Shown: positions 11,881 to 25,787, numbered from the whole stretch's first letter. The stretch: 63,714 nucleotides of DNA, filler included, from Hyphochytrium catenoides (GCA_900088475.1; 12 parts of 12 records of this genome joined end to end with filler, not necessarily neighbours in it), one strand, 5' to 3'. A program made the numbers and translations. The notes: generated from the letters alone by a model not told the origin.

Positions 11881-13925
11881 CTTGACATCTTGAGCAGATC
11901 CAGCACCAAACATCTTCAGAATCCGCCCAGCTTCACTCCTGGGGAAGCTCTGAAACTTCTTCCTCCTCTTTATAAGTTATCAAGAGTGATAATCGATTAT
12001 ATAATCAATCGTCAACCTAGTGAAAGGTTATTTGGTGGTAGAGAAAGGAAATTTTGGTGACTGGCTCTCCCTTGGATTCTGGCTCTCTCCTGTTCTCCCT
12101 CCCACTTGTGCTCTCCTTCTTCCCTCTCTCCTCTCTCTGTCTCGTATTGACGCTTTCCTTTTGTACATTGATGTTCTCTCTCTCTCTCTCTNNNNNNNNN
12201 NNNNNNNNNNNNNNNNNNNNNNNNNNNNNNNNNNNTTAATTAATTAANNNNNNNNNNNNNNNNNNNNNNNNNNNNNNNNNNNNNNNNNNNNCGGATATTG
12301 TCAAGTGATAATGATCTTATTTGCAATAAGAGGACATCATCAACATTAGAGATCGATCATCAGTGACCGCTAACGCTTTTGCAATGAAAGAATTATCCGA
12401 CAAACATGAACTTCAAGATAAGAAGATGACTATCAAGCGGATGATGATACAGACTCATCGGTGTGTTCCGTGGGTCCTGCCTGCTGTTGTTAACCATTAG
12501 AGAAAGGAGAAAGAAAGGAGAAGAAGGCACCATGGCCACACAGCAGCGGGATCTGAGAAGAGTCTCTATCCTCCTGGCTTCTTCAGGGTGACTGGCAATA
12601 ATATTTCTCTCTGCATGATGATGACTGTGGTCTGGATATCATCAGCTTCTTCCCCTCGTTTTGCTATGATTTACATATCTGAGAAGAAAGAAGTTCAATG
12701 ATGAATCTCATCTCTTTGATATCGGTCATGATAATGAAGAAGAGTTCTTTTCTGGTCACGCTCATAGAGGATGAAGACGTCGTTTCTCCTTCTTCTTCTT
12801 CTCCTCCCCTCTATCACCTTCCGTGTGATCTATAAAGATAATGCATCACTCACCTATCGCCCTCCGCAATCTGCTCCTCCTGCCTCCGACTAGGAGCTCG
12901 TGCATCAGAACACCAATAGCTCTTTATCTGCCTCATAGCGCCGCTATTATCGAGAGTAATAAAATAATGCAATCTTCTTCAAAAATTGCTCAGATCTGTC
13001 TCTATAGAGAATGAAGTCTTACCGGTCTGATGCAAGATGATTACATGTATCATTCTTAAATCCAGGCTGTTTTAGCGTGCTTATCCGTGATCCCTGGTTC
13101 TTGACCACAGATAAAGGTGTTCTGAAGAAAGGAAGACCTTGTTCTGAAGAATCTCCACTTTCCCCGTGGTTCAAGCTTTAGTCTGTCTTCCTCGAAGAAG
13201 GCCATGGGAGGCGCTAGGCCTGGAAGTAGGAGAATAGTTGAGAGCTTTGCTTGGGCTCGGAGTGGCAGCAAGAGCACGCTTGTTGACAATTCTCTCCGTG
13301 GACTGGCCATTGATGAGAAAGGAAGAAGTTGACCTTGGGCTCCCAGTACTGGCAGCATTAGCACGCTGCTGCTGCCTGCTGCTGCTGCTGCTTGACAATT
13401 GAAGTTAAGTTGGCGGCGGGTTCACCCGGAAGAGGCAAGGATGAGTTGCTGAATAATTAGCTTGATTGGGTTGTTGATCAAAATGTGTCGATTGCTGTTG
13501 AGCCGAAGACCCCAGTTGTAGCTTTGTTGCTTGCCATTCAAGGAAAAGATGTCACTCGCTACGCCAGGCCTGAGCAATGGACATGCCGCCTACGGTTCAA
13601 AGTCCGACGGCATCTGGTGAGCGGAAATCATCTGTGTACCTGGCTTCCCTCTCACAAAATAATTGTCCATCTGTATTCCTTTAGAGCATGGCCATCTTCT
13701 AGGCTACCTTTTGCTGGTGTTTGCTGCAGCCCCGCTCCTCCCTCCCTCCTCCTTGGGATTTTCCTTGTCTATTTAGTCGGTTCTACGAGCTCCATATCGA
13801 CGTCATTCGCAATTCACAGTCGGTCTCTGTCTTCTCTGTCATAATTTAGGTCCCAGCGCTATCGCAGCTCTCTAAATAGGCCCCCCGCCGATGCATTGCA
13901 CCTGCGACCGCCTCCTCAGGGAGAT

Positions 13926-15954
13926 ATGGCTTCCTCCTCGTTTGGCCAGAGCAGTATGGAAACGATACAGAACTATGGCGAGAAGAATCCCATATCTTCT
14001 CAGTCTATAGATGCTTTAATGGAGGCGTACGTCTCTCTGGCGTTTCTTTCTGGCACGGGATCGTTCACGTTCTACGCTTTGCTCGCCTCGGTCTCGTTCT
14101 TCGATCTGGCCCGGGAAGAAGATGACTCATCGTTTCTTGCCATTCCCATCCTCTCTGCCACTGCCGTGGTGACTATCGTTTGCTGCTTGGTTCTACACTT
14201 TGTAAGAAGCTATAGGTGCGTCGTACTTGATGACTTCCTTAATCCGCTGATATGGTGATTTGCCTTATGTCCACCGGCTCCCCTTATCCTTGGTCTATGC
14301 AGATCAGTCTCCATCCATTGTGCCTGATATATCGTTGTCCTGCTGCGCGACTCTTGATTTCCATTTACTGCCAGTATTGTCAGTAGCTCAAGTGCCCTGA
14401 ACTCAATGCAGTTATTATGTCTGTGTGTCGCACTCTTCTACTCATTTTTGGGGCTATTTCCTGATGTGAGCCAGTTTGCCTGTTACCTTCTCTACGGACT
14501 TTGTCACCTCTAGTTTGGCGCTGCTGAGGTGGGATCTTACCTTTTCCGCCTTCTGCTCTCTCCCTTGTCCTGCACCTTTGTCATGATCGTCCGTCCTCAA
14601 GCTCCTTTCTGGCTATCGGTTATTGCGTTTCTATCCTCTGCGGCTTAGTCTTTGTGATATATGGGCTGGCGAGCCCAGTGAAGGATGTGATCGACAGAGA
14701 GGTGACCTCGTCCCATTGGAGCCCGTTGATGCTGATAACCCTTCTCTTAGGGGGCATAGCCACGCCCCTGGTGGAACTTTATGTCTACGCGCTTGCTTTT
14801 AAAAGTCAGGACTTCTGGCATCTCTTCGTTGTCAGGCTCGGTAGCTCTGTATCAGGAGGTGAGCATAAGCGCTGACTAACTGTAGTTTGACTTTCGCACT
14901 GTGCCTTGTTTATGCCCTTGTCTACTTCCACGTCGGACCCTAAGCAGATGTTCTCTCACTCTTGCACCGGTTTCGCTCTTTTCTCTCTGTCTTTCTCTCT
15001 TTCAGTCTCGGTTTCAGTGGAAGCACTCCCGCTTCTCACCTATGGTCATATTGTTCCATCAATATCACGATCTACCCTTGACTTTTTGTTCAGATTGACT
15101 TTTTCCCCGTACCGGCCACCTTAAGTCTCTTATCTCTTTTCCTTATCGCCTTGTTCCCTGCAGCCCTCTGCATGGTAGTCCAGTCCGTCATCCGCTTCTC
15201 TTTCTTTGTGACTGGCTCTTCATCCATCTCCGAGAAGCTCAGTCGCAACTGGAAGAGTGGGCCCATCATATTTTTCGTCGTTGTGGCGGTGGTCTCAGCT
15301 GTGGGTCTCTTTGACTACTTTGCGACGATACGCACCTACTCTCTCAGGGAACATGTAGCGGAGATGCACGCTTATCTCTCCTCGTCCTCCCTCTCTGGTA
15401 CAAGAAAGAGGCTCAAGGATATCTTTCAAATACTCAAGGGAATGCTTACCTTGGTTGTGTGTCTCTTCACGAGCTTCTTCGTCACGTTCCTGATCTTCCC
15501 CGGCCTTTCCTGTCATGCAGAGAGCGCGGAGACCACTGTGCCTTTCTCTCTTCATCTTTCAGTCTTCTGTTCTCCCGCAGTTCTCCTATCCTTTTATATA
15601 GGAGACCTTGGAGGCACACTCTTTCTCTCTTCTGCAAGACTAAGGAGTGTGAGCATTCGGGCAGTGGTATCTCTCTCTGTATTGCGCGGTGTGGTCTTTA
15701 TTCCCCTCATTATGTTCCTAAGTAGCTCTGCGGCGAAAGATACCTCTGCCTGGGGGATGATTTTCGTCGTCTTCTTTCTCGGACTCTCACACGGATTCCT
15801 TGTATCGCTCCTGACCTGCAGAATGTCCAGGAAGCTTACCATGGTGGAAAATCCGCACTTTGCATCGTTTCTCTATCTCTTCTGGACCTATTTTGGAGCG
15901 CTGTTAGGCTCTATGATTGGCTACGGCCTGTATGCTCTAATGGTTGCAGCTTAG
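13926..15954 (+). CDS. Equilibrative nucleoside transporter (SLC29/ENT family), spliced
   Basis: Multi-TM protein with ENT motifs FFVTFLIFPG, FYIGDLGG, LRGVVFIPL, FFLGLSHGFLVS, FGALLGS. Internal exon boundaries are approximate. Confidence 0.85.
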
Positions 15955-17923
15955 AAGAGAGGAAATATCGTTTTGTCTCGCCTCACTTGCAGCCCTAAGA
16001 GCATGTCTCCCATAACACCTGGCATGGGCTGATGAGGTATGGTATCCAACGATCCTCTTTCACCTATGCGCTTTGGCAACTGCATTCGCTCTCTTCTCTC
16101 TCTTGCAGGCACTGTGACTGCCCGTCTCTTTGTATTCTTCCCTGTTATTCGTTCGTCCTAATTGTCCTGAATAATGTAGAGGCAGCCCACTATACATCGC
16201 CCTCGTCGTCCGCCTTTACGCATGTCACTATGTTATCTCTAGCGCGGGGCCAAACGCTCCATGCAAGAAAGACTTGGTAAAGCTCTGAGAGAACAAGAGG
16301 CTCAAGAATTTGTCAGCAGAGGAGGAAAGAAAGTACCATTTAGCACAAGAGAAAGTCTGACGTAGAGATAAGTAGAAGTGAGAGAGATGCTGCCATCAAG
16401 AGTACCTATGCCTAGTCCGTCTTGCTGAAAGGCCTACAGTCTAGCGGCTCACTAAGCCACACAGTCAGTGCCAAGACAATCGCTCACTCGAAAACCACGT
16501 TTATTGCCATTAATCTAACGAGTTGAGCTCCTTCTAATCTTATTCCTCGACGCCTCGCTGTCAATAAATATAAGCGGAAGGTTCATCCCCCCCATCAGCC
16601 ACATAGCCGCTGTTCGCATTTGGTCATACGTGTCTTATAGGCGACTACTCAGCTGTAAGAGCGAAGTGCTCTTCCATATCCCAAACCTTTCTGCGTGCCA
16701 CTAAAGGGACACACCGTAGCCTCCTGAAATGTTAGTTACTGCCTGCACATGGTGCTTGTGACTAGTCCTTCGCAAAGGGTACCGTCGGGCAATGACACTC
16801 TTTTAGAGGAACCGCCGCCGACTTCTTCACACTGTAGGTAAACTCCCAATAAACGCTAACAGATATAGAAGTTCTTTGAACAAGGGCTCTCGTAGTCTTT
16901 AACTCATGTTCGTCTGATCGTACTGGTTCAAGGGGCGGTGCCCACAGTGGTCATCATAGTCCCTCATGCTTACATCCCCATTGGCATTTCGGACCAGATA
17001 TCGATAAAATGAACTAGAGCTTCCAAGCTGGTCCGGCCTTCGCCTTTCCAGAACCTGAAGAAGGAGGAACAACTGAGGAGACATTGTCTGTCCATCAGTC
17101 ATAAGGATTTAGCGACAACTGGGAAGAAACGACTATAGGGTTCCTAAAGCATGGCAGGGCGTAGAAGAGGTTTACGAGGATTAAAAATAGAGACTTCCCC
17201 GGGAAGCTCCTCCCACTTCTGCAGATGCTCCACAACCAAGAAAGAAGCTTTCCCGCTGCACTGAAGAATGATAGTTTGATAGGCTAGCTCATTGCCCGGG
17301 CCGCCAAGGAGACTGGTCAAGCTCCGTCTCAGAAAAGCGGATGAGCTTTCTGTCTTCGGATCAACCTAAAGATAACTCGGTCTACTGACTCCTGGGGGAG
17401 CTCTAAGTATTCCCGCCAAGGAAAGCCTGTGAAGTTCAATATAATCAGAAAGGCAAGAAACGGCTGAGGTTGATGTGTGTGAGAGAAAAACATAGACAGA
17501 AGAGCAAGAGAGAGGGAGCAAGAGACAGAGAGAGAGAGCAANNNNNNNNNNNNNNNNNNNNNNNNNNNNNNNNNNNNNNNNNNNNNNNNNNNNNNNNNNN
17601 NNNNNNNNNNNNNNNNNNNGAGAGAGAGAGAGAGAGAAATTGGGATGGAAGGGGAACAACCTGTAGCGGGCAACTACAACCTGTAGTGAAGCAGCAGAAG
17701 GCGAGGTGTGTCTCTGCTACTCTCGCATCGTGTCTCGTCTCGGTTCTATGTATTGGCTTCTCCTGCTCTTGGCCTTCATCTCCCCACTTTATGAGCGGAG
17801 CACTGGGCAGCTCTGCTTTGACCTACGGTGCTTCTAGGAACTAGGAGCGGCGGCCAACACTGCCAACCAATCTTAAGGATGGTCGTTGAAAGCAGCACTT
17901 CTAGGTGACTGGGCCAGAGGTCG

Positions 17924-19521
17924 ATGGCGGGGCAACTGCCTGGAGGAGGAGTCCGCCGCAGTTTGAAACTCAAGAGGACGACCACCTCCGCTTCCTCGTC
18001 CTCCACTCTTTCCTCGAAAAACGGCCTTTTTGAGACCAAGAATAGCTCATTATCGTCTTCTTCTTCGACAACCCAGACGACTGCAACGTCCATCACTGCA
18101 ATCTGCGCATCGTCCACGGTCGATAAAGGTAAGTTCGTAACTCCGAAGGCTCGACCAACAATAGTTTCGACTTAACAGCCCAATGTCCATATTTAGAAAA
18201 TGTGGACAAAGCACAGCAATGTGTTTCTATTGAGAACAAGAAAGAAGGGAATGATGCCCATCGCTCGTTCTTTCAAGCTGTGAAGAAAGGACCAGAGCGA
18301 AAGGGTCCCCTCGGCAATCTAACTGACAGAGAAGAACAAGGATGCTCGCTTCCAAAACCTGCCCCCAAAAGTCCGAAGGACGGTGAGGTGACAAGGTAGC
18401 GGCATGAGTCACTTCTCCCTCTCCCCAACGCTGTCGCTCACTCTCCGAGCAAAAAACCTCACGCTTCGTCACGTCTCTTTCGCTCTTTTACTTCTCTTCA
18501 CCGGTGTACAAGCATCTGACGGGACATGCTCTCTTTGAGTTTTAGATGGCCTCAAGATGCGAAAGTGCAGAGTAGCGAGCCCTGGCAGCAGACTTCCGCT
18601 GGCAAGAAGAGGAAGAGAGAAACCAGTAGTGCCACCACAGGATTCACTGATATGGCTCCATCCTCTTCAGCTGGCGAGGCGGCCACCATAATTTGTCAAC
18701 ATCAGGCTGAGAAGCCCCGCATTAAGGGCCTTCAAGCAGAAGGTGCGAGAGATAACGAGGGAAAGCTGTTCTTTACCCTCTTCCCGGAGCCTCATGACGC
18801 CTTGATCTATCGCACTGATTCTTCCGAGGCGTATTGCCTGCTTCAACACGTTCTGAAATGGGGACGACAGGAAGAGAAGAAAGACGCGACGGACGGAGAC
18901 CACGAGAGAGAAGCTGGAGATTTTGGCTCTCTTTATGATAGCAATCTTCCTACTCTTCCCCTTCCTCCCGAAGGGCTTCTCAAGCTAAAGGAGGGCTTTA
19001 ACAATGGGTACAATGTGCAGCCTGCTGAGAGGAAGGAGGTGACAAAGAAGAGCTTCTGGGCTTGTATCTATGAATGTCCCTACTCCCTCGCAGCACCAAC
19101 GAACAGACAGACAATGGGCGGAGCTGAGACAATTGTAGCGCAGATCAGAAGAGAGCTCAACGAGCAGAAAGATGATAAGGAACAGAGCAGTGACATTTCT
19201 GCTCACCTTGACCATACACCGCTGAACATTGACAAATGGAAAGCGCATAACGGCATATCAAAAGAGGAACGGGCCGTAAGATCGCCTGCAGAAGAGGTGG
19301 CAACTCTAACACAGGAGCAGCACTCAAACCTTCCTTCCTGCATCAATCCCCAGAACAACCATAAAGCGGTAGAAGTATCCCTTGTTGGTGGCATCGACGA
19401 AGACCTCTCTTCGTCCGGTCCTTCTTCCTGTCCTATATGTCTCTCTTCTCTGTCCTCTCTCGGAGAAGTACAAGCTGCCGGACACGTCTCTACTTGTTTG
19501 GCGCTGATGGTCGATTCGTGA
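17924..19521 (+). CDS. Largely disordered, probably nuclear protein with a C-terminal UBZ-type (CCHC) zinc finger
   Basis: Three GT-AG-linked ORF segments, a KKRKR NLS-like motif, and C-terminal CPICLSSLSSLGEVQAAGHVSTCL (C-x2-C...H-x3-C). Confidence 0.6.
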
Positions 19522-19809: not shown

Positions 19810-19869
19810 GAACTTGACAGATGAAGAAGAGCGACAGATAAGAAGAACTTGACAGATGAAGAAGAGCGA
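19810..19869. repeat. 25-bp direct repeat x2 (gaacttgacagatgaagaagagcga)
   Basis: Copies at 19810-19834 and 19845-19869. Confidence 0.85.
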
Positions 19870-21905
19870 GTTTGAAAGTAGGACTTGTAACACCGTCACA
19901 GTCTTTCTCTCGTTGCGTTACTTTAGCCCCAAAGATCTTAGTTTCCCCAATCTCTCCGCTTTAGTACTAAGACTTGGGTCTTTGCCTTCATTGCTCTGCC
20001 TTGGTCGCCCTGTATTTCTATTTTTATACGTCAGTCCTAGGATCGGCGTAGGTTCTTGGCTGCTGTTGAACACCTGAACCAAGTGCAAAGGCTCGATGGG
20101 CTGACTTATAGCGAACGCCGCCACCCGCACTATAAGTCTGTTCAAGATATCATAGGAAGAGGATGAGTAGAATCTTCTTCCGCGTCAAGTGCGCGAAGGA
20201 GGGGAAGCTACAAAATGGATTGCTTTCCAACTCATAACGTCATCAGCTTCGGTGACGGTCAGCCTTTGTCTTTTGCCACACTCCCGCCCCATCTTCATGG
20301 CATGCTAACGCCCTCCCCCCGCCTTATGTGCTCCATCAGCAGGCCCCCGCTGCCGTCACATCCGTCACGAAACACCATAGCTAGAAACGGAGTAAGATAG
20401 AGATATGGACTCTTATGCAGAACTAGTTTTATTGAGTAACTTCCCTCAGCGCCAACAGACAATCTCTACTCGCTACCGCCTCTCTTTCTCTATACAGAAG
20501 ACGCTGCCAGTCCAGTCATTCCCACATCTTCTTGCCCTTACTCTTTCACTCTTCTTCATCACTTACTTTCTTTCTCCCTCTTCTTGGTTCACCTCTTCTC
20601 TTCACTTTCTATGGCTGGCTGGCTCATTGTTGGCCCCGTCCTAGGAAGCCCTGTTCATTCTGTTTGAGCTGTGTGGCGTGGCGGCTCGCGCCGATTGCGG
20701 GCAGGCAACTGCACTTCTTGACAAATATATTAGGGCGAACTATGGAGCGGTCACTCTGTCTCTTGACTCAACGCTCTGTCTCGCACTATTCTCTTCACAG
20801 TCCCTATCTATCACTCCCCTGTCTCTCGTGGCATTATCTCGATGTGAGTACTTCTCTCTTTCCTAGGATTGATAAGGCTTACAATTAGGCCTAGCTCACT
20901 CTGACTCGATCCGATTACCTCTGTCTACTCCATTTGGTGACATAAAATCGAAAACAATGGGGTCATTTTGTGCTGAATTCAGAAATCCTCCTGGTCTATC
21001 CGAGAATTAGCCATCTGGTTCCAATGTACAGTGTTTATGGGGATCTTTAACACCCAAGTGCCCTGAATTTATTCCGTGTCGGGAGGTAGGTGGAAAAGTC
21101 TCATGTGAGAATCAAGAATGTTGGATGTATTGATTCATAATAAAGCTAAAGTTCCTACCTGATGCTACCTCAAGTCGAAAAAAAATCCAATCATCTGTCT
21201 GTCCTTACTCTGTCTCCCGGCCTTACCACTCTTTCTTTGTCCTCCGGCTCGCACTGTTTCAACCGCTGTATCTTTATCAAACCACGAAAAACCTCTATTC
21301 CTCCATCTCATCTCTCTCTGACCACTCTGTCTCGGTCACTCTGTCTCTGATCTCTCTCTAGCATAGCGGCCAACCCTCTGTTGTTCCTTCCTCGCTCTCG
21401 CTCAGCCGCTGGCCACATCATCCGTCACAAGCTTGGAGACTGGAGACAAGCAGTAGAAGCTTCTCAACAAAGAGCAGCATCGAGGCAGCTCAGCGCTTCT
21501 ATAAAGGTTCCATTGGCCGTCTTCCTAGCGACGATCTCGCTGTTCAACTCGCTGCTGGTAAAGGAGCTAGGCCGGAGAGAAGAGCGCTAAGGGAAGTAGT
21601 AGGACAAGAGGCGAGAGATTGACGATTGTTAGCTGCTTTCAAGGTCACGCGCAGATCCTGGGTTTGATTATTAGGAAGTAGAACTCTTAAGATGCTGCGC
21701 AGGGATGCGTTATGAAGGTGTTCCTGCAGATAGAAAGAGACAGTAGGCAGAAAGGTCTTCTTCCGGAGCTCTGCTAGCCAAAAGAATCCAGCGAAGGAAG
21801 ATTTTGAGGGACCGCCAGCGGACCTTGCACCTTTCTCCTTCAAAAATTTTGCCGGTCGAGGAGGACGGAGACCGAGACTCCGGAAGAAGGGACTTCAAAA
21901 GAAAG

Positions 21906-24900
21906 ATGACATCACCTACGGATCCCGCGAGCGAAAGCAACAAAAAGGAGAACACCAGCATCTTGGTGGTGGATGACTCAAAGACAGACCGCAAGATTAT
22001 TGGGCATATTTTGATGAAGGAAGGCTATAAAATATACCAGGTACCGACGAAACTGGTTTGTCCTCTCTCTTCCCAATGGGAGACTTTCATGTCTTCAACT
22101 TGTTGAGTGTCCCCAACAATCTTCGAAGAACTCGCGAGCTGGTCTCGCACATAGTACGGGCGCTGCTGCGAAAGGCGCTCCAATGAGTCTTTCAAGGAAG
22201 CTCAACCTTATTCCTCCTTGCTCCTTTGCCTGCCATCTACTTAGGGGCGAAGTCAATTTTTTACTATTTGATGCTTCTATCGCTCCCGTCGTATCTCCCT
22301 TCGCCAAGAACCTTGAGCCGTAATCGCTTTCTCGGTCATTCATCTTCCGTTGCGATCTTTCTGTTGCTCTCTCTCCCAGGCATGTGATGGCCCTTCGGCC
22401 CTGGAGCTTCTCAAGCACACCAAGTTTGACCTGTTGCTAGTAGACGTTAACATGCCTGGGATGAACGGCTACGAGCTCATTCAGGCGGCTTCTTCCTCTG
22501 TCCGGTTCTTTAAGAATACGCCTGTAATTATGCTGTCTTCTTACTCGGAAGAGGCATACGTCGTCCAGGGGATAGAGAAAGGTGTCAGTGATTACATTGT
22601 GAAGCCCTTTACGCGCTCGGGCTTGGTCGATAGAGTGCAGATTATTTTGGCTCGCCATAGGGCGGAGGATGAGGCAGAAAGAGAGAAGGACTCATCCTTC
22701 TCTAAGCTTTTGAGAGGCTCTCCATCATACACGGAAGCAGTGTGCAATGTCCTTCTTTTGATTGACAAGAGCCACCCCATGACTCGTTTTATCACCACTG
22801 TTCTTTCTGTCATGGAGTGCAATATCACGGTGGTGGACAGACATGCAGCACCAAAGAAGAATCAAAGGAAGATGGCGTTTGACATAGCGCTGCTGCAGGT
22901 GGATGATCCTTCCACCTCCGTGCTAGGTCAGTTTACTTATTTATCATTTGAGCTGATCCTCGCCATCCTCTTCTCCTACATTTACAATTGCTTTCATCGG
23001 GCCTCTCTCCACTCGCTTGACGCGTCTATGTACCTGTCGCTGACTGCTTTCCCTGGGCATATGCTTAAAACAAATTAGAGGGGGCAGAAAGGGGAGAAGA
23101 CCGCACCGCCGCCCGGACTCTAGCGTCGTATGGATTTTTCCATGACAAGAAGACAGTGGAGTTTTGTCTCTCGTCAACGGAGATGGACCGCTTCAGAGAG
23201 ACCCCAGCTGTTGAAAGGGATGCTGGGGGAGGACGGAAGAGTTTACTGGGGAATCTTGTGGGAGGAGCAATGCATCCAAACAGAGTCCTGAGAATCCCAT
23301 CAGAGATTGAGGAGCTCAGGAAGCTAGTGGTATGACTTCTCTGTCTCTGTCTCTCTCTCTCTGCTCTTTTTTCCTTCCCTATCATTGAAACCCTCTCCCT
23401 CACTGCTTTCAGCTTTTGTTATTTCGCTACCTGGCTTACTTCATACGTCTCTCTTCTGCTTGGGACTATGTGCATTAAGAGGCTTGAGCCCTTTACTATC
23501 TCATTAATAGCCCTGCCTGATGAAAAAAGGCCGTGTCCTTATTTCTCGTCTCTTTCTTTCCTTCTGTAAGCTCGTTAGTATAGCCCTCACGGCCCGTCTC
23601 GTTCCTTCTCTGTGCTCCATGTCTCCCAAAATCTGGGCGGTTCCTTTTGTCATGATTTCGTGACTGACTCTCTCTCTCTTGCTCTCATGTCAACGCTATC
23701 GCACAGGTGGAGGTGGCGAAAAACAAGCAGGGCAGAGCATGGTTACTCTCCCATCTCCGTCAAAGCAGTACAATGACCGGGATCGGTCGTATTAGCGTTG
23801 TCGACAGGAACGTAGATGGATTCCCTCTCGTTTTCGTAGATGGCGCCTTTTTGCGCTTCATGGGATGGACGGAGAGTGACATTCTGGGAAAACCTATGAG
23901 TGTTTTCGAAGGCAAAGACACGGACCCTCAGACCTCCCAACAGATATCCAGTGCGATTGAGAAAGGAACAGAGGTGAGATATAGGAGAGGGACGGGCGCC
24001 GTAGCGATCCTATAGCAGAAAGAGACATGCACATTCAGTCGGAGAGAGAAAGACACAGACTCTTGACACAGTTGTCAGACAGTCAATAGAATAGAGAGAG
24101 GCATCAAGCAGAGAAATAGCTTGAGCAAGTAGCATAGGACGGAGGAAGGTCATCGCCATGGCACTTTCATGGATCAGGCCCTAAATCTTCTTCTGCAGCT
24201 TTCCCGTCGTTGCTAAATTCTATCTTCTTTCTCTTAACATTATCTTCTTGTCCCTGTCCAGCTCTCCGTAGTGGTACTCTACTATAAGAAGGATGGCACC
24301 CCGTTCTGGAACTATCTCCATCTCAAGCCCATCAAGGACAACTCTCAAGGGCTTATCTTCAGAATGGCCGGAGTGCACCGCATCGTAGATGCTGACGGTG
24401 ATATTAGCGATGATTCCTCGACTGGAGGAGATGTACAGAGATATGAAGACGAAGGAAGAGAGGACGGAGGGACGCCTTCGGAAGTCTCGTCACTCGGATC
24501 GCCATCTCCCAGCGGAGGATCATCTCCGGTCGCTCTCAGTGATGCAGGGGATAGGGGAGACAGAGAGAGCCTTATAGAGCCGTCTCTCCTCGCGCAGAAG
24601 GAGAAGATGGTGGCCGAGCTTCAGTACCAGAATCACAGCCTCGCAAAGGAGCTAGAGATGCAGAAGGCACAGTGCCAGAGCTTGATGAACAACATCATCT
24701 CGATCAATCAAGAGAAGGCTCTTCTGCTGCAGAGAAACCAGCAGCTGCACGAGGAAGCCGCAAGGAGAGGTTATATCCCACAGTTCTACTTCCCTAATGC
24801 CAACAGCTTGCACGCTCCGACCACGCTCGCTCCAGGAGATGGGGAAGATAAGGCTAAGGGACTTCCTCTTGATATTAGGCGTTTGTTTTCTATCAGTAGC

Positions 24901-25787
24901 GGGGAAAATATACCATCTCTCCGCCGGATTTCCTCCATTGAAGTGAGTGGCGAAGGAGATCCCCAAGTGCGGCTCCCGCTCTCTTCGAGGGGTAAAGAGG
25001 CTTTCGACAAGTGCATGAGGGAGCACTTCCAGTTTCCTGCTTATTTTGAACAGCTTGTCATCACTCGTCTGAGAGACGGTAGAGACAATGTCATCCGTCT
25101 CTCCTCTGTCCAGAAGTACTGGGACGAAGAGATACAAGGCAGGACGATGGAGCAGCGGTGCTGGGACCTACTTCGCACAGGAATAGGAGCGTCAAAGAGG
25201 GAGAAGGAGAAGGGTGACAGAGGAGGAGAGAAAGCGGTCGAGAGAGGAGGTAGAAGACGAGTCAAGAAAAACTACATCGCTCCTGAAGACCTTGACGGCA
25301 TTTTGAACGGCCTTGTCGCTTCTCACCCAGATCTCCGAGTGATCAGGAGAGACCCGCGCTTAGCGGACATGTACAAGACAGTGACGGTGACCTCAATCTT
25401 CTTCTCGTTCAACCTGAAACGGAACCAGCGTCTCTCTTGGGAAGAGTTCCGCCAGTCAGGCCTAACGGAAATTTTCTTCTCTGCACCACTCTCTTCTATT
25501 GAGTCTCTTTACCCGATTGGCGTCGTTCAGAACAAGTACCTCATTGACGCCTTTACAGAGCTTGACTGGGAGCAGCAGGGATACATTGGAAGCGAGGCCA
25601 TCCGCTCATTGGACCGGAGACTCTTCTCAGAGTACATCCTGAAGAGGATTTTTGACGGTTATCCCCGTCCATTGGCTCGGAAGGGGATGATGAGCTTTGA
25701 GGATTTTGTTTGGTTCACATTGGCGCTGAATGACAGAATGGGAGAGCTTTCTGCAGGGTACTGGCTGCGCTGTTTGGACGAGGATGG
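21906..25787 (+). CDS. Fusion protein: receiver (REC), pseudo-receiver, LOV-like PAS, coiled coil, PP2A B''(PR72)-like EF-hand regulatory domain; 3' truncated
   Basis: In-frame GT-AG exons 21906-22040, 22380-22926, 23079-23329, 23707-23973, 24262-25787. REC: ILVVDDS/LLVDVNMP/MLSS/IVKPF. LOV-like: FPLVFV...ILGKPMSVFEGKDTD...YYKKDGTPFWN...GVH. B''-like: NYIAPEDL...SHPDL...ELD...RIF...MSFEDFVWF...YWLRCLDEDG. Confidence 0.85.

What the first reader, a model, noticed from the sequence alone, without database searches (positions are those of the whole stretch)
21906..25787. Receiver + LOV-like PAS domain fused to a PP2A B''-like regulatory subunit: candidate sensor-controlled phosphatase-targeting system
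Seen: five exons join in frame through canonical GT-AG sites into more than 900 aa ordered REC, pseudo-REC, LOV-like PAS, Ser-rich linker, coiled coil (LLAQKEKMVAELQYQN...LHEEAARR), B''-like domain. The second half of the PAS domain and the B'' region share one uninterrupted exon (24262-25787), so that join does not depend on my splice model. REC1 keeps the acidic pair (DD), phosphoacceptor Asp (LLVDVNMP), Ser and KP. Known: B''/PR72 subunits target PP2A to substrates and are regulated by Ca2+ through EF hands. Eukaryotic receivers usually output to transcription factors, MAPK cascades or phosphodiesterases, and stramenopile LOV proteins are typically bZIP-LOV (aureochrome) or RGS-LOV (helmchrome). 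I know of no described REC-PAS-B'' protein. Inference: His-Asp phosphorelay and a PAS ligand could directly gate Ser/Thr dephosphorylation.
Basis: partly seen in the sequence, partly recalled or inferred. Interest (0 to 1): 0.88.

Follow-up and report, generated by a model that had tools for sequence, protein, structure and literature searches.

The report
Response regulator fused to PP2A B'' subunit
This intron-containing eukaryotic gene fuses a bacterial-type phospho-receiver domain and a degenerate light-sensor-like PAS domain to a regulatory subunit of protein phosphatase 2A, and four uncultured relatives share the receiver-PP2A fusion, which suggests an undescribed route from His-Asp signalling to Ser/Thr dephosphorylation.

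Summary
Five exons (21906-22040, 22380-22926, 23079-23329, 23707-23973, 24262-25787) join through GT-AG sites into 908 stop-free codons, cut at the 3' end by the contig edge.

What the domains are:
- REC1 is complete, spans the exon 1/2 junction, and keeps D23, D24, D67, S98 and K120.
- A second REC-like domain is supported only weakly, and only for its N-terminal half. The exon-3 part resembles nothing known.
- The PAS domain is LOV-derived (best solved matches are aureochrome and phototropin). It has Met in place of the adduct Cys and keeps 1 of 8 flavin contacts, so it is probably not a photoreceptor.
- The C-terminus is a B''/PR72-type PP2A subunit (PR72/PR70 E 1e-15; predicted fold TM 0.6). 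It has the IPQFY scaffold-latching motif and a degenerate EF1. The contig ends inside EF2.

The B'' core sits in a well-supported subclade. All four relatives with enough upstream sequence also carry N-terminal REC domains (two as single ORFs). None has a PAS domain. No paper describing such a fusion was found.

No RNA data were obtainable, so the exon 2-3-4 junctions rest on codon usage and frame only. PP2A binding and control by REC phosphorylation are inferred. Verdict: a real new domain architecture and an uncharacterised family. The mechanism is plausible but untested.

The parts
21906..22040 (+). Exon 1. Start codon, and REC1 beta1-alpha1-beta2 with the acidic pair D23-D24.
   Evidence: First ATG after the in-frame stop at 21744, followed by a GT donor. 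Pfam Response_reg positions 1-25. Codon log-odds 0.23.
22041..22379 (+). Intron 1 (339 nt, GT-AG, pyrimidine-rich 3' end).
   Evidence: Stops in all frames. 80% pyrimidines in the last 40 nt. Negative codon log-odds.
22380..22926 (+). Exon 2. Holds the rest of REC1 up to nt 22667 (D67 at 22443-22445, S98, K120), a linker, and the N-terminal half of a degenerate second REC-like domain (nt 22746-22916, aa 168-224: D174-K175, with Q218 at the acceptor position).
   Evidence: Response_reg 1.2e-22, profile positions 29-111. The custom REC HMM gives 150 bits over aa 16-141 and 2.6-6.2 bits over aa 168-224. The PleD alignment runs on into PleD's second receiver. Atlas features are REC-like, a lead only.
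22927..23078 (+). Intron 2 (152 nt, GT-AG). This is the weakest intron: poor pyrimidine tract, and open in exon 2's frame up to TAG 23076.
   Evidence: Codon log-odds are negative in all frames. Retention would end the protein after REC1 and half of the second REC-like domain.
23079..23329 (+). Exon 3 (aa 228-311). Coding-like but without recognisable homology. It may be the C-terminal half of the degenerate REC.
   Evidence: The open frame 23069-23332 hugs the splice sites. Codon log-odds of 0.22 exceed every noncoding window. No Pfam, PDB, Atlas or REC-HMM match.
23330..23706 (+). Intron 3 (377 nt, GT-AG).
23707..23973 (+). Exon 4. Linker and the N-terminal half of the LOV-derived PAS domain (from about nt 23776). 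GKPMSVFEG replaces the LOV signature GRNCRFLQG, with Met375 (23896-23898) at the cysteine position.
   Evidence: The best PDB matches are aureochrome and phototropin LOV domains, 9e-6. PAS_9 positions 8-57. Ungapped alignment to algal LOV domains.
23974..24261 (+). Intron 4 (288 nt, GT-AG), splitting the PAS domain.
   Evidence: The PAS_9 profile continues across it, from position 57 to 65.
24262..24387 (+). Exon 5, first part: C-terminal half of the PAS domain (YYKKDGTPFWNYLHLKPIKD...GVH).
   Evidence: Phototropin LOV 3e-5. PAS_9 positions 65-93. Alignment.
24388..24576 (+). Acidic, Ser/Gly-rich linker, probably disordered (aa 443-505).
   Evidence: Composition S13, D11, G11 of 63 residues.
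24577..24768 (+). Predicted coiled coil (aa 506-569), ending 2 residues before the scaffold-latching motif.
   Evidence: Heptad register with 10 of 19 hydrophobic a/d positions, no Gly, one Pro at its N-terminal edge. Aligns with the coiled-coil segments of P0004 (607-687) and P0008 (15-82).
24775..24789 (+). [quoted passage not shown]
   Evidence: PMC3698643. IP[RQK]FY is common upstream of the B'' core in the hits, and [ILVM]PxF[YFW] occurs in 80 of 123 hits. G-Y-[IVL]-P-x-F-Y is invariant in the subclade.
24775..25787 (+). B''/PR72-type regulatory-subunit core: helical domain, EF-hand_13, degenerate EF1 loop at 25564-25599, and the first three residues of the EF2 loop at 25777-25785. Cut off by the contig edge.
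   Evidence: PR72/PR70 chains 1.4e-15 to 2.7e-14. EF-hand_13 at 41 bits. AlphaFold2 pLDDT 83.7 and pTM 0.80. The top six Foldseek matches are all PR70/PR72, E 1e-10, TM 0.60-0.63. Column statistics.

Best explanation
One eukaryotic gene encodes an atypical response regulator whose output module is a PP2A B''-type regulatory subunit.

Domain order: REC1 (phosphorylatable), a degenerate second REC-like domain, a LOV-derived PAS domain that is probably flavin-less, a disordered acidic/Ser-rich linker, a coiled coil, the IPQFY scaffold-latching motif, and the B'' core.

The protein belongs to an unnamed subfamily of divergent B'' subunits. That subfamily is REC-REC-coiled coil-B'', with EF1 lost and EF2 kept, and is found in uncultured eukaryotes. 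The window's copy has additionally acquired the PAS domain.

Proposed mechanism (inferred): a histidine kinase/HPt phosphorelay phosphorylates Asp67 of REC1. The resulting change in REC packing or dimerisation, helped by the coiled coil that abuts the IPQFY latch, alters how the B'' module engages the PP2A A-C core or its substrates. A two-component signal would then be converted directly into Ser/Thr dephosphorylation. The PAS domain most likely acts as a dimerisation or docking module, or binds an unknown non-flavin ligand.

Shown: the sequence architecture, the domain identities, the residue states, the B'' fold and the family context. Inferred: splicing at junctions 2/3 and 3/4, PP2A binding, and control by phosphorylation.
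For: - Gene model: in frame, GT-AG, coding-like exons and noncoding-like introns.
- REC1 is seamless across exon 1/2 at 150 bits, with D23, D24, D67, S98 and K120.
- The PAS profile is continuous across exon 4/5, and LOV domains are the best solved matches for both halves.
- B'' identity by sequence and by fold.
- The IPQFY motif matches the PR70 A-subunit latch. The residues equivalent to PR70 R398 and D403 are kept.
- The tree places the window's B'' core in a 12-row clade with SH-like support 100, together with P0004, P0014, P0151 and P0007.
- P0014 (1212 aa) and P0004 (1338 aa) are single ORFs with Response_reg and EF-hand_13.
- L007 becomes REC1-REC2-coiled coil-B'' once a 252-nt GT-AG intron and a 10-N gap are accounted for.
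- L008 has two Response_reg calls directly upstream of its B'' gene on the same strand.
Against: - No RNA evidence: no run was listed.
- Intron 2 has a weak acceptor and is open in frame until its last codon. Exon 3 has no homology support.
- The B'' module is divergent. The EF1 loop is D-W-E-Q-Q-G-Y-I-G-S-E-A, against a near-invariant D-x-D-H-D...D in 128 canonical B'' sequences. The PR70 W277 position is Arg and the R288 position is Gln.
- EF2, which is essential for holoenzyme assembly in PR70, and the catalytic-subunit helix lie beyond the contig edge.
- A disordered linker of about 60 residues separates the sensor domains from the coiled coil, so rigid helical signal transmission from the PAS domain is unlikely.
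- No HK or HPt gene lies in the 13.5-kb piece, and the organism is unknown.
Confidence: 0.6

Rival explanations
1. These are two adjacent genes, not one. The first is a REC-only response regulator: exons 1-2 read through intron 2 to the TAG at 23076. The second is a separate PAS-coiled coil-B'' gene starting at an internal Met (M263, M292 or M334 of the model).
For: Intron 2 stays open in exon 2's frame up to its last codon and has a poor pyrimidine tract. Exon 3 has no homologue. In-frame Met codons exist. There are no transcript data.
Against: Intron 2 scores as noncoding and exon 3 as coding in the model frame. Two relatives carry REC and B'' in a single ORF, and two further loci carry them as adjacent same-strand gene calls. 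The intergenic space would be under 200 nt. Read-through would cut the second REC-like domain in half.
Confidence: 0.1
2. The fused protein is real, but its B''-like module no longer works through PP2A. It would serve as a Ca2+-binding or scaffolding output domain for other partners.
For: EF1 is degenerate. The W277 and R288 equivalents are not conserved in the window or its clade. In full-length clade members the catalytic-subunit helix reads SSLLDFINP instead of CQMLDMIKP.
Against: The A-subunit latch motif is kept (I-P-x-F-Y in the window; its first residue is I, V or L across the clade). The R398 and D403 equivalents, the EF2 loop (DxDDDGYLSxxD in relatives) and the overall PR70 fold are also kept. 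W277 itself is only W in 44 of 128 canonical sequences.
Confidence: 0.2
3. The LOV-like domain is a working blue-light sensor, which would make this a light-gated PP2A regulatory subunit.
For: The best solved matches are genuine LOV photoreceptors, and the alignment to algal LOV domains is ungapped. From my own knowledge, cysteine-less LOV domains can still signal through flavin photoreduction.
Against: GRNCRFLQG reads GKPMSVFEG (Asn to Pro, Cys to Met, Arg to Ser, Gln to Glu). The second phosphate-binding Arg is Ser, the first ring-contact Asn is Tyr, and the terminal Gln is His. Only 1 of 8 canonical flavin contacts survives.
Confidence: 0.04
4. The locus is a decaying pseudogene or an assembly chimera, and the open frame is fortuitous.
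For: The contig has N gaps and ends inside the gene. No identical or near-identical protein was found in 1.84 billion representatives.
Against: 908 codons without a stop across five exons. Codon usage matches the neighbouring genes. The functional residues of REC1 are intact. Domain profiles continue across two junctions.
Confidence: 0.03

Closest known systems
Human PP2A B''/PR72-PR70 regulatory subunits (PPP2R3A/B; PDB 4I5L, 4I5N, 4I5J, 4MEW)
   Same: The C-terminal 340 residues share sequence (E 1e-15) and predicted fold (TM 0.6) with them. The IPxFY hydrophobic latch, the EF-hand_13 region, the Arg of YW(F/L)RC (PR70 R398) and the start of the EF2 loop (D403) are present.
   Different: The window's protein has N-terminal REC, REC-like and PAS sensor domains plus a coiled coil instead of the unrelated N-termini of PR72 and PR70. 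Its EF1 loop is degenerate, so regulation is probably not by Ca2+ at EF1. The W277 and R288 equivalents are changed. EF2 and the C-subunit helix are not visible because of the contig edge.
Unnamed REC-REC-coiled coil-B'' proteins of uncultured eukaryotes (P0014, P0004, locus L007/P0151, locus L008/P0152)
   Same: Same B'' subclade (support 100). All share N-terminal receiver domain(s), a coiled coil ending in G-Y-[IV]-P-x-F-Y, a degenerate EF1, and the F-x-D-F-V-W...D-R-M motif.
   Different: They have no PAS domain. Their second REC keeps its acidic residues. They are GC-rich with long low-complexity inserts and are about 30-36% identical to the window's protein. None has been characterised.
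Aureochrome and phototropin LOV domains
   Same: They are the closest solved relatives of the PAS domain. The alignment over the LOV core is ungapped, including YKKDGTPFWN.
   Different: Met replaces the photoactive Cys, and 7 of 8 flavin-contact residues are substituted. The domain is not followed directly by a J-alpha-type helix into the effector. A disordered linker of about 60 residues intervenes.
PleD-type tandem receivers (REC plus adaptor REC)
   Same: A phosphorylatable REC is followed by a second, degenerate receiver-like domain. The exon-2 product aligns with PleD residues 31-174, into its second receiver.
   Different: The output is a PP2A B'' module, not a GGDEF domain. Only the first half of the second domain is recognisable here.
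Bacterial response regulators with PP2C/SpoIIE phosphatase outputs, and eukaryotic response regulators such as Dictyostelium RegA or fungal Ssk1 and Skn7 (from my own knowledge, not tested here)
   Same: They follow the same logic: a receiver domain gates an enzymatic or signalling output, in some cases Ser/Thr dephosphorylation.
   Different: Here the receiver is fused to a non-catalytic targeting subunit of the eukaryotic PP2A holoenzyme. That is an unrelated protein family and a different level of control.

Membership tests
Response regulator receiver (CheY-like, PF00072) | Profile match above the curated cut-off over the whole domain. | tested here: met
   The exon-2 part alone scores 80.6 bits against a cut-off of 30.2, and exon 1 supplies profile positions 1-25. 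A custom REC HMM aligns aa 16-141 at 150.7 bits.
Response regulator receiver (CheY-like, PF00072) | Active-site quintet: acidic pair, phosphoacceptor Asp, Thr/Ser, Lys. | tested here: met
   D23-D24, D67 (LLLVDVNMP), S98 and K120 (IVKPF), by alignment to the REC HMM and to PleD and CheY chains.
Response regulator receiver (CheY-like, PF00072) | Phosphotransfer from a histidine kinase or HPt protein. | not testable with these tools
   No HK or HPt gene lies in the 13.5-kb piece, and the rest of the genome is not available.
LOV photosensor (flavin-binding PAS) | PAS/LOV core sequence similarity. | tested here: met
   Both halves hit LOV structures best (9e-6 and 3e-5). The alignment to algal LOV domains is ungapped.
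LOV photosensor (flavin-binding PAS) | Adduct-forming Cys in the GXNCRFLQ motif. | tested here: not met
   The motif reads GKPMSVFEG, with Met375 at the Cys position.
LOV photosensor (flavin-binding PAS) | Conserved flavin-contacting Asn, Arg and Gln residues. | tested here: not met
   Only the Asn of FWN is kept. Asn to Pro, Arg to Ser, Gln to Glu, Arg to Ser, Asn to Tyr and Gln to His at the other positions. The list of contact residues comes from my own knowledge of LOV2.
PP2A B''/PR72 regulatory subunit | B''-specific EF-hand_13 profile and similarity to solved B'' chains. | tested here: met
   PF17958 at 41 bits against a cut-off of 22.6. PR72 and PR70 at 1.4e-15 to 2.7e-14 over exon-5 residues 337-508.
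PP2A B''/PR72 regulatory subunit | B'' fold (helical domain plus EF-hand core). | tested here: met
   AlphaFold2 pLDDT 83.7 and pTM 0.80. The six best PDB matches are all PR70/PR72, TM 0.60-0.63 over 315-351 columns (0.46 by query for the shorter 4i5j), with the next hits at E above 4e-3.
PP2A B''/PR72 regulatory subunit | N-terminal hydrophobic motif that latches onto HEAT repeat 1 of the A subunit (PR70 I125 and F128). | tested here: met
   IPQFY at aa 572-576. The same motif class occurs upstream of the core in 80 of 123 hits.
PP2A B''/PR72 regulatory subunit | Two Ca2+-binding EF hands: EF1. | tested here: not met
   The loop is D-W-E-Q-Q-G-Y-I-G-S-E-A, with Ala at position 12. Canonical B'' sequences have D at positions 1, 3, 5 and 12 in 111-127 of 128 cases.
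PP2A B''/PR72 regulatory subunit | Two Ca2+-binding EF hands: EF2, which contacts the A subunit. | tested here: inconclusive
   The piece ends after YWLRCLDED, that is, the R398 equivalent and loop positions 1-3. Relatives continue with DxDDDGYLSxxD.
PP2A B''/PR72 regulatory subunit | AB-2 scaffold contacts (PR70 W277, R288, R362, R398, D403). | tested here: inconclusive
   R398 and D403 are kept. W277 is Arg and R288 is Gln, with an adjacent Arg kept. R362 falls in an alignment gap.
PP2A B''/PR72 regulatory subunit | Catalytic-subunit-binding helix (PR70 439-446) and physical binding to the PP2A core. | not testable with these tools
   The region lies beyond the contig edge. In clade relatives the helix is present but reads SSLLDFINP against CQMLDMIKP.
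REC-REC-coiled coil-B'' subfamily (unnamed) | B'' core groups with the subfamily. | tested here: met
   A 12-row clade with SH-like support 100. The nearest rows are P0001, P0008, P0004 and P0014. This is a FastTree tree, and the window's branch is long.
REC-REC-coiled coil-B'' subfamily (unnamed) | N-terminal receiver(s), then a coiled coil ending in G-Y-[IV]-P-x-F-Y. | tested here: met
   The window has REC1 plus half of a REC-like domain, and a coiled coil at aa 506-569 followed by GYIPQFY. The same layout is seen in P0014, P0004, L007 and L008.

The most novel reading that the evidence does not exclude
A previously unrecognised class of eukaryotic response regulators uses a PP2A B'' regulatory subunit as its output, so that His-Asp phosphorelay directly re-targets or gates the PP2A holoenzyme. 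It is conserved in several uncultured protist lineages. In this genome it is further elaborated with a domesticated, flavin-less LOV domain as an extra regulatory module.
Probability: 0.45. Interest if true: 0.75.

Novelty: new variant of a known kind. Interest (0 to 1): 0.62.

Why it matters
PP2A specificity is set by its B subunits. Known B'' subunits are tuned by Ca2+ at two EF hands. In this subfamily EF1 is lost and receiver domains are added. That suggests a swap of regulatory input, from calcium to two-component phosphorelay.

If this is confirmed, it would be the first direct link between His-Asp signalling and the main eukaryotic Ser/Thr phosphatase. It would also add a new output class for eukaryotic response regulators, and provide a natural example of a LOV domain re-used after losing its chromophore site. 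The family is small and well delimited enough to test by expression, pull-down and phosphomimetic (BeF3-) assays.

Tried and rejected
- RNA evidence: the look-up of sequencing runs listed no RNA run, so read laying could not be used.
- Organism identification failed. The neighbouring nucleoside-transporter ORF found no relatives by word search. There were no Rfam hits in the piece. The TSA prefix of two clade members (GECG01) was not found in the paper library.
- Word-based protein searches were weak for this family. The P0014 B'' region found only P0151. Exon 2 found only bacterial OmpR-type regulators.
- The metagenome scan with the family alignment returned only P0014's own contig.
- Exon 3 as the C-terminal half of a REC domain was not supported. 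A REC HMM gave no hit. An HMM of the relatives' REC2 C-half scored -0.8 bits, and 250 of 1000 shuffles did as well. PDB gave only spurious leucine-rich-repeat matches. Atlas recognition was low. The visual resemblance (VEFCLSS; GAM...LRIP) therefore stays a lead.
- Atlas search with exon 5 returned only generic PAS fragments.
- A PAS domain in the relatives was looked for with phmmer and Pfam, and none was found.
- The spliced protein could not be given to Pfam, AlphaFold or the big searches as one sequence, because it has no single reference. Whole-protein and whole-PAS folds were therefore not made.


Full report
**1. The observation**

- 21906-22040
- 22380-22926
- 23079-23329
- 23707-23973
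- 24262-25787

Every intron is GT-AG and the phases fit. The joined frame is 908 codons without a stop. The last exon runs into the N block, so the protein is cut at its C-terminus by the contig edge.

The open frame of each exon closes within a few to 63 nucleotides outside the proposed splice sites. The exception is exon 2, whose frame stays open through the 152-nt intron 2 up to TAG 23076.

I trained a codon-usage log-odds score on exon 5 and two neighbouring ORFs:
- Exons 1-4 score 0.16-0.23 bits per codon in the model frame.
- All four introns are negative in all frames.
- 528 noncoding 250-nt windows have a mean of -0.19 and a maximum of 0.18.

Exon 3 therefore looks coding and intron 2 noncoding, but this is statistical evidence only. 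No RNA run was listed for the locus, so no junction has transcript support.

**2. The domains**

*REC1.* Pfam on the separate exon products puts Response_reg positions 1-25 in exon 1 and 29-111 in exon 2 (1.2e-22). I built a REC HMM from the window's own REC1, P0014's REC1 and 15 bacterial regulators. It aligns aa 16-141 end to end across the junction at 150.7 bits; because the window's REC1 is part of that model, this score measures colinearity across the junction rather than independent homology, which rests on the Pfam match. The active-site set is complete: D23, D24, D67, S98 and K120.

*Second REC-like domain.* Downstream, aa 168-224 resemble the first half of a receiver. Three weak lines agree:
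- the alignment to PleD runs on into PleD's second receiver;
- the REC HMM gives 2.6-6.2 bits;
- language-model features point to Response_reg clusters (a lead only).

In that alignment the acidic pair is D174-K175 and the acceptor position is Q218. If this is a receiver, it is a pseudo-receiver. The exon-3 product matches nothing.

*PAS domain.* It is split by intron 4, with PAS_9 positions 8-57 in exon 4 and 65-93 in exon 5. Both halves find LOV photoreceptors as their best solved relatives (aureochrome 1a at 9e-6, phototropin at 3e-5). The alignment to algal LOV domains is ungapped. However:
- the signature GRNCRFLQG reads GKPMSVFEG, with Met375 at the cysteine position;
- the second Arg is Ser, the first ring-contact Asn is Tyr, and the terminal Gln is His.

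One of eight canonical flavin contacts remains. This is a LOV-derived PAS domain that has most probably lost its chromophore.

*Linker and coiled coil.* A Ser/Asp/Gly-rich linker (aa 443-505) follows. After it comes a Gly-free heptad segment with one Pro at its N-terminal edge (aa 506-569). That segment aligns with the coiled-coil segments of relatives.

**3. The B'' module**

Sequence and fold evidence:
- Exon-5 residues 337-508 match solved PR72 and PR70 chains at 1.4e-15 to 2.7e-14, right up to the contig edge.
- EF-hand_13 scores 41 bits against a cut-off of 22.6.
- An AlphaFold2 model of window:24742-25785 with a 75-row alignment reaches pLDDT 83.7 and pTM 0.80.
- Its six best PDB matches are all PR70 or PR72 (E 1e-10, TM 0.60-0.63). 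The next hits are generic EF-hand proteins at E above 4e-3.

I used the PR70 holoenzyme paper (PMC3698643) as the list of defining contacts.

| PR70 feature | State in the window |
|---|---|
| N-terminal hydrophobic motif (I125, F128) | Present as IPQFY, aa 572-576; a motif class common across the hits |
| R398 | Kept (R903) |
| D403 (EF2 loop) | Kept (D908) |
| W277 | Changed to Arg |
| R288 | Changed to Gln |
| R362 | Falls in an alignment gap |

The EF1 loop is near-invariant in 128 canonical B'' sequences (D at positions 1, 3, 5 and 12 in 111-127 of them). Here it is degenerate: D-W-E-Q-Q-G-Y-I-G-S-E-A. The piece ends three residues into the EF2 loop. EF2 and the catalytic-subunit helix cannot be judged.

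**4. Relatives**

An exhaustive HMMER search with the exon-5 product found 413 B''-like representatives but none closer than E 4.6e-19. The window's own protein and close orthologues are not in the library.

A tree of 140 B'' cores places the window's sequence in a 12-row clade with SH-like support 100. This is a FastTree tree, and the window's branch is long.

Within its inner group, every member with enough upstream sequence carries receiver domains:
- P0014 (1212 aa, one ORF): REC1, REC2 and B''.
- P0004 (1338 aa, one ORF): REC and B''.
- Locus L007 (P0151): a 252-nt GT-AG intron restores REC1, REC2 follows, and a 10-N gap explains the split gene call before the coiled coil and B''.
- Locus L008 (P0152): two Response_reg calls lie directly upstream on the same strand.

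P0001 and P0008 start at contig ends inside the coiled coil.

All members share three features:
- the coiled coil ends in G-Y-[IVL]-P-x-F-Y;
- EF1 is degenerate;
- EF2 is intact in the full-length members.

None has a PAS domain. REC-to-B'' fusion is therefore a conserved family trait. This is the strongest argument that the window's REC exons and B'' exon belong to one gene. The LOV-derived PAS is an addition seen only here so far.

**5. Mechanism**

Shown:
- an intact, phosphorylatable receiver;
- a B'' fold with the scaffold latch;
- a coiled coil ending two residues before that latch;
- loss of EF1 across the subfamily.

Inferred: phosphorylation of D67 by a phosphorelay changes receiver packing or dimerisation. 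Through the coiled coil, this changes the availability or geometry of the IPQFY latch and the B'' core for the PP2A A-C dimer or for substrates. In effect, Ca2+ control at EF1 is replaced by two-component control.

The PAS domain lacks flavin contacts and is separated from the coil by a disordered linker. It more likely acts as a docking or dimerisation module, or binds another ligand.

I put about 0.85 on the architecture being one gene. I put about 0.45 on the PP2A-gating mechanism.

**6. Rivals**

- Two genes, through intron-2 read-through: about 0.1.
- A B''-like module that no longer uses PP2A: about 0.2.
- An active photoreceptor: about 0.04.
- A pseudogene or assembly chimera: about 0.03.

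**7. Novelty**

Nine full-text searches were run: seven for descriptions of receiver-PP2A/B'' or cysteine-less LOV architectures, of which none found a description, and two for the GECG01 accession prefix. The relatives are unnamed environmental predictions, and one is mislabelled 'OmpR family regulator'.

Only the best 150 of 413 hits could be inspected. Named species with this architecture therefore cannot be excluded.

All the domains are known kinds. The combination, and the apparent swap of regulatory input, is a new variant.

Noticed in passing
window 13485-15954 (+), clearest at 15151-15954: This is an equilibrative nucleoside transporter (ENT) gene. The 267-aa ORF matches Pfam Nucleoside_tran positions 125-305 (4e-10). 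It is probably multi-exon, with further exons upstream. A word-based search found no relatives at all.
   Followed up: partly
window 18526-19521 (+): A 331-aa ATG-started ORF with coding-like composition and no Pfam match. It was used as training data for codon usage. Its function is unknown.
   Followed up: no
window 17542-17619: A 78-N assembly gap. A short imperfect AG-rich tandem repeat (17494-17532, period 14) lies just upstream of it, and another imperfect tandem repeat lies at 19816-19869.
   Followed up: no
window 22927-23078: Intron 2 is open in exon 2's frame until its last codon (TAG 23076). Retaining it would give a truncated protein with REC1 and half of the second REC-like domain. 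This could be a regulated isoform or simply chance.
   Followed up: partly
L005 671-13625: A 151-kb metagenome contig (ERZ27265937) carries four B''-like genes in tandem on one strand (562, 557, 470 and 518 aa, all with EF-hand_13 hits). They belong to the same broad clade as the window's B''.
   Followed up: no
L007 889-1986 and L008 11988-12476: Both REC-REC-B'' relatives have a GPR137_N-domain gene within a few kb, on the opposite strand. This suggests conserved synteny between two related uncultured eukaryotes.
   Followed up: no
P0004 (JGI 3300035703): The source annotates this 1338-aa REC-B'' protein as 'DNA-binding response OmpR family regulator'. That is a mislabel, and it hides the architecture from keyword searches.
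   Followed up: yes
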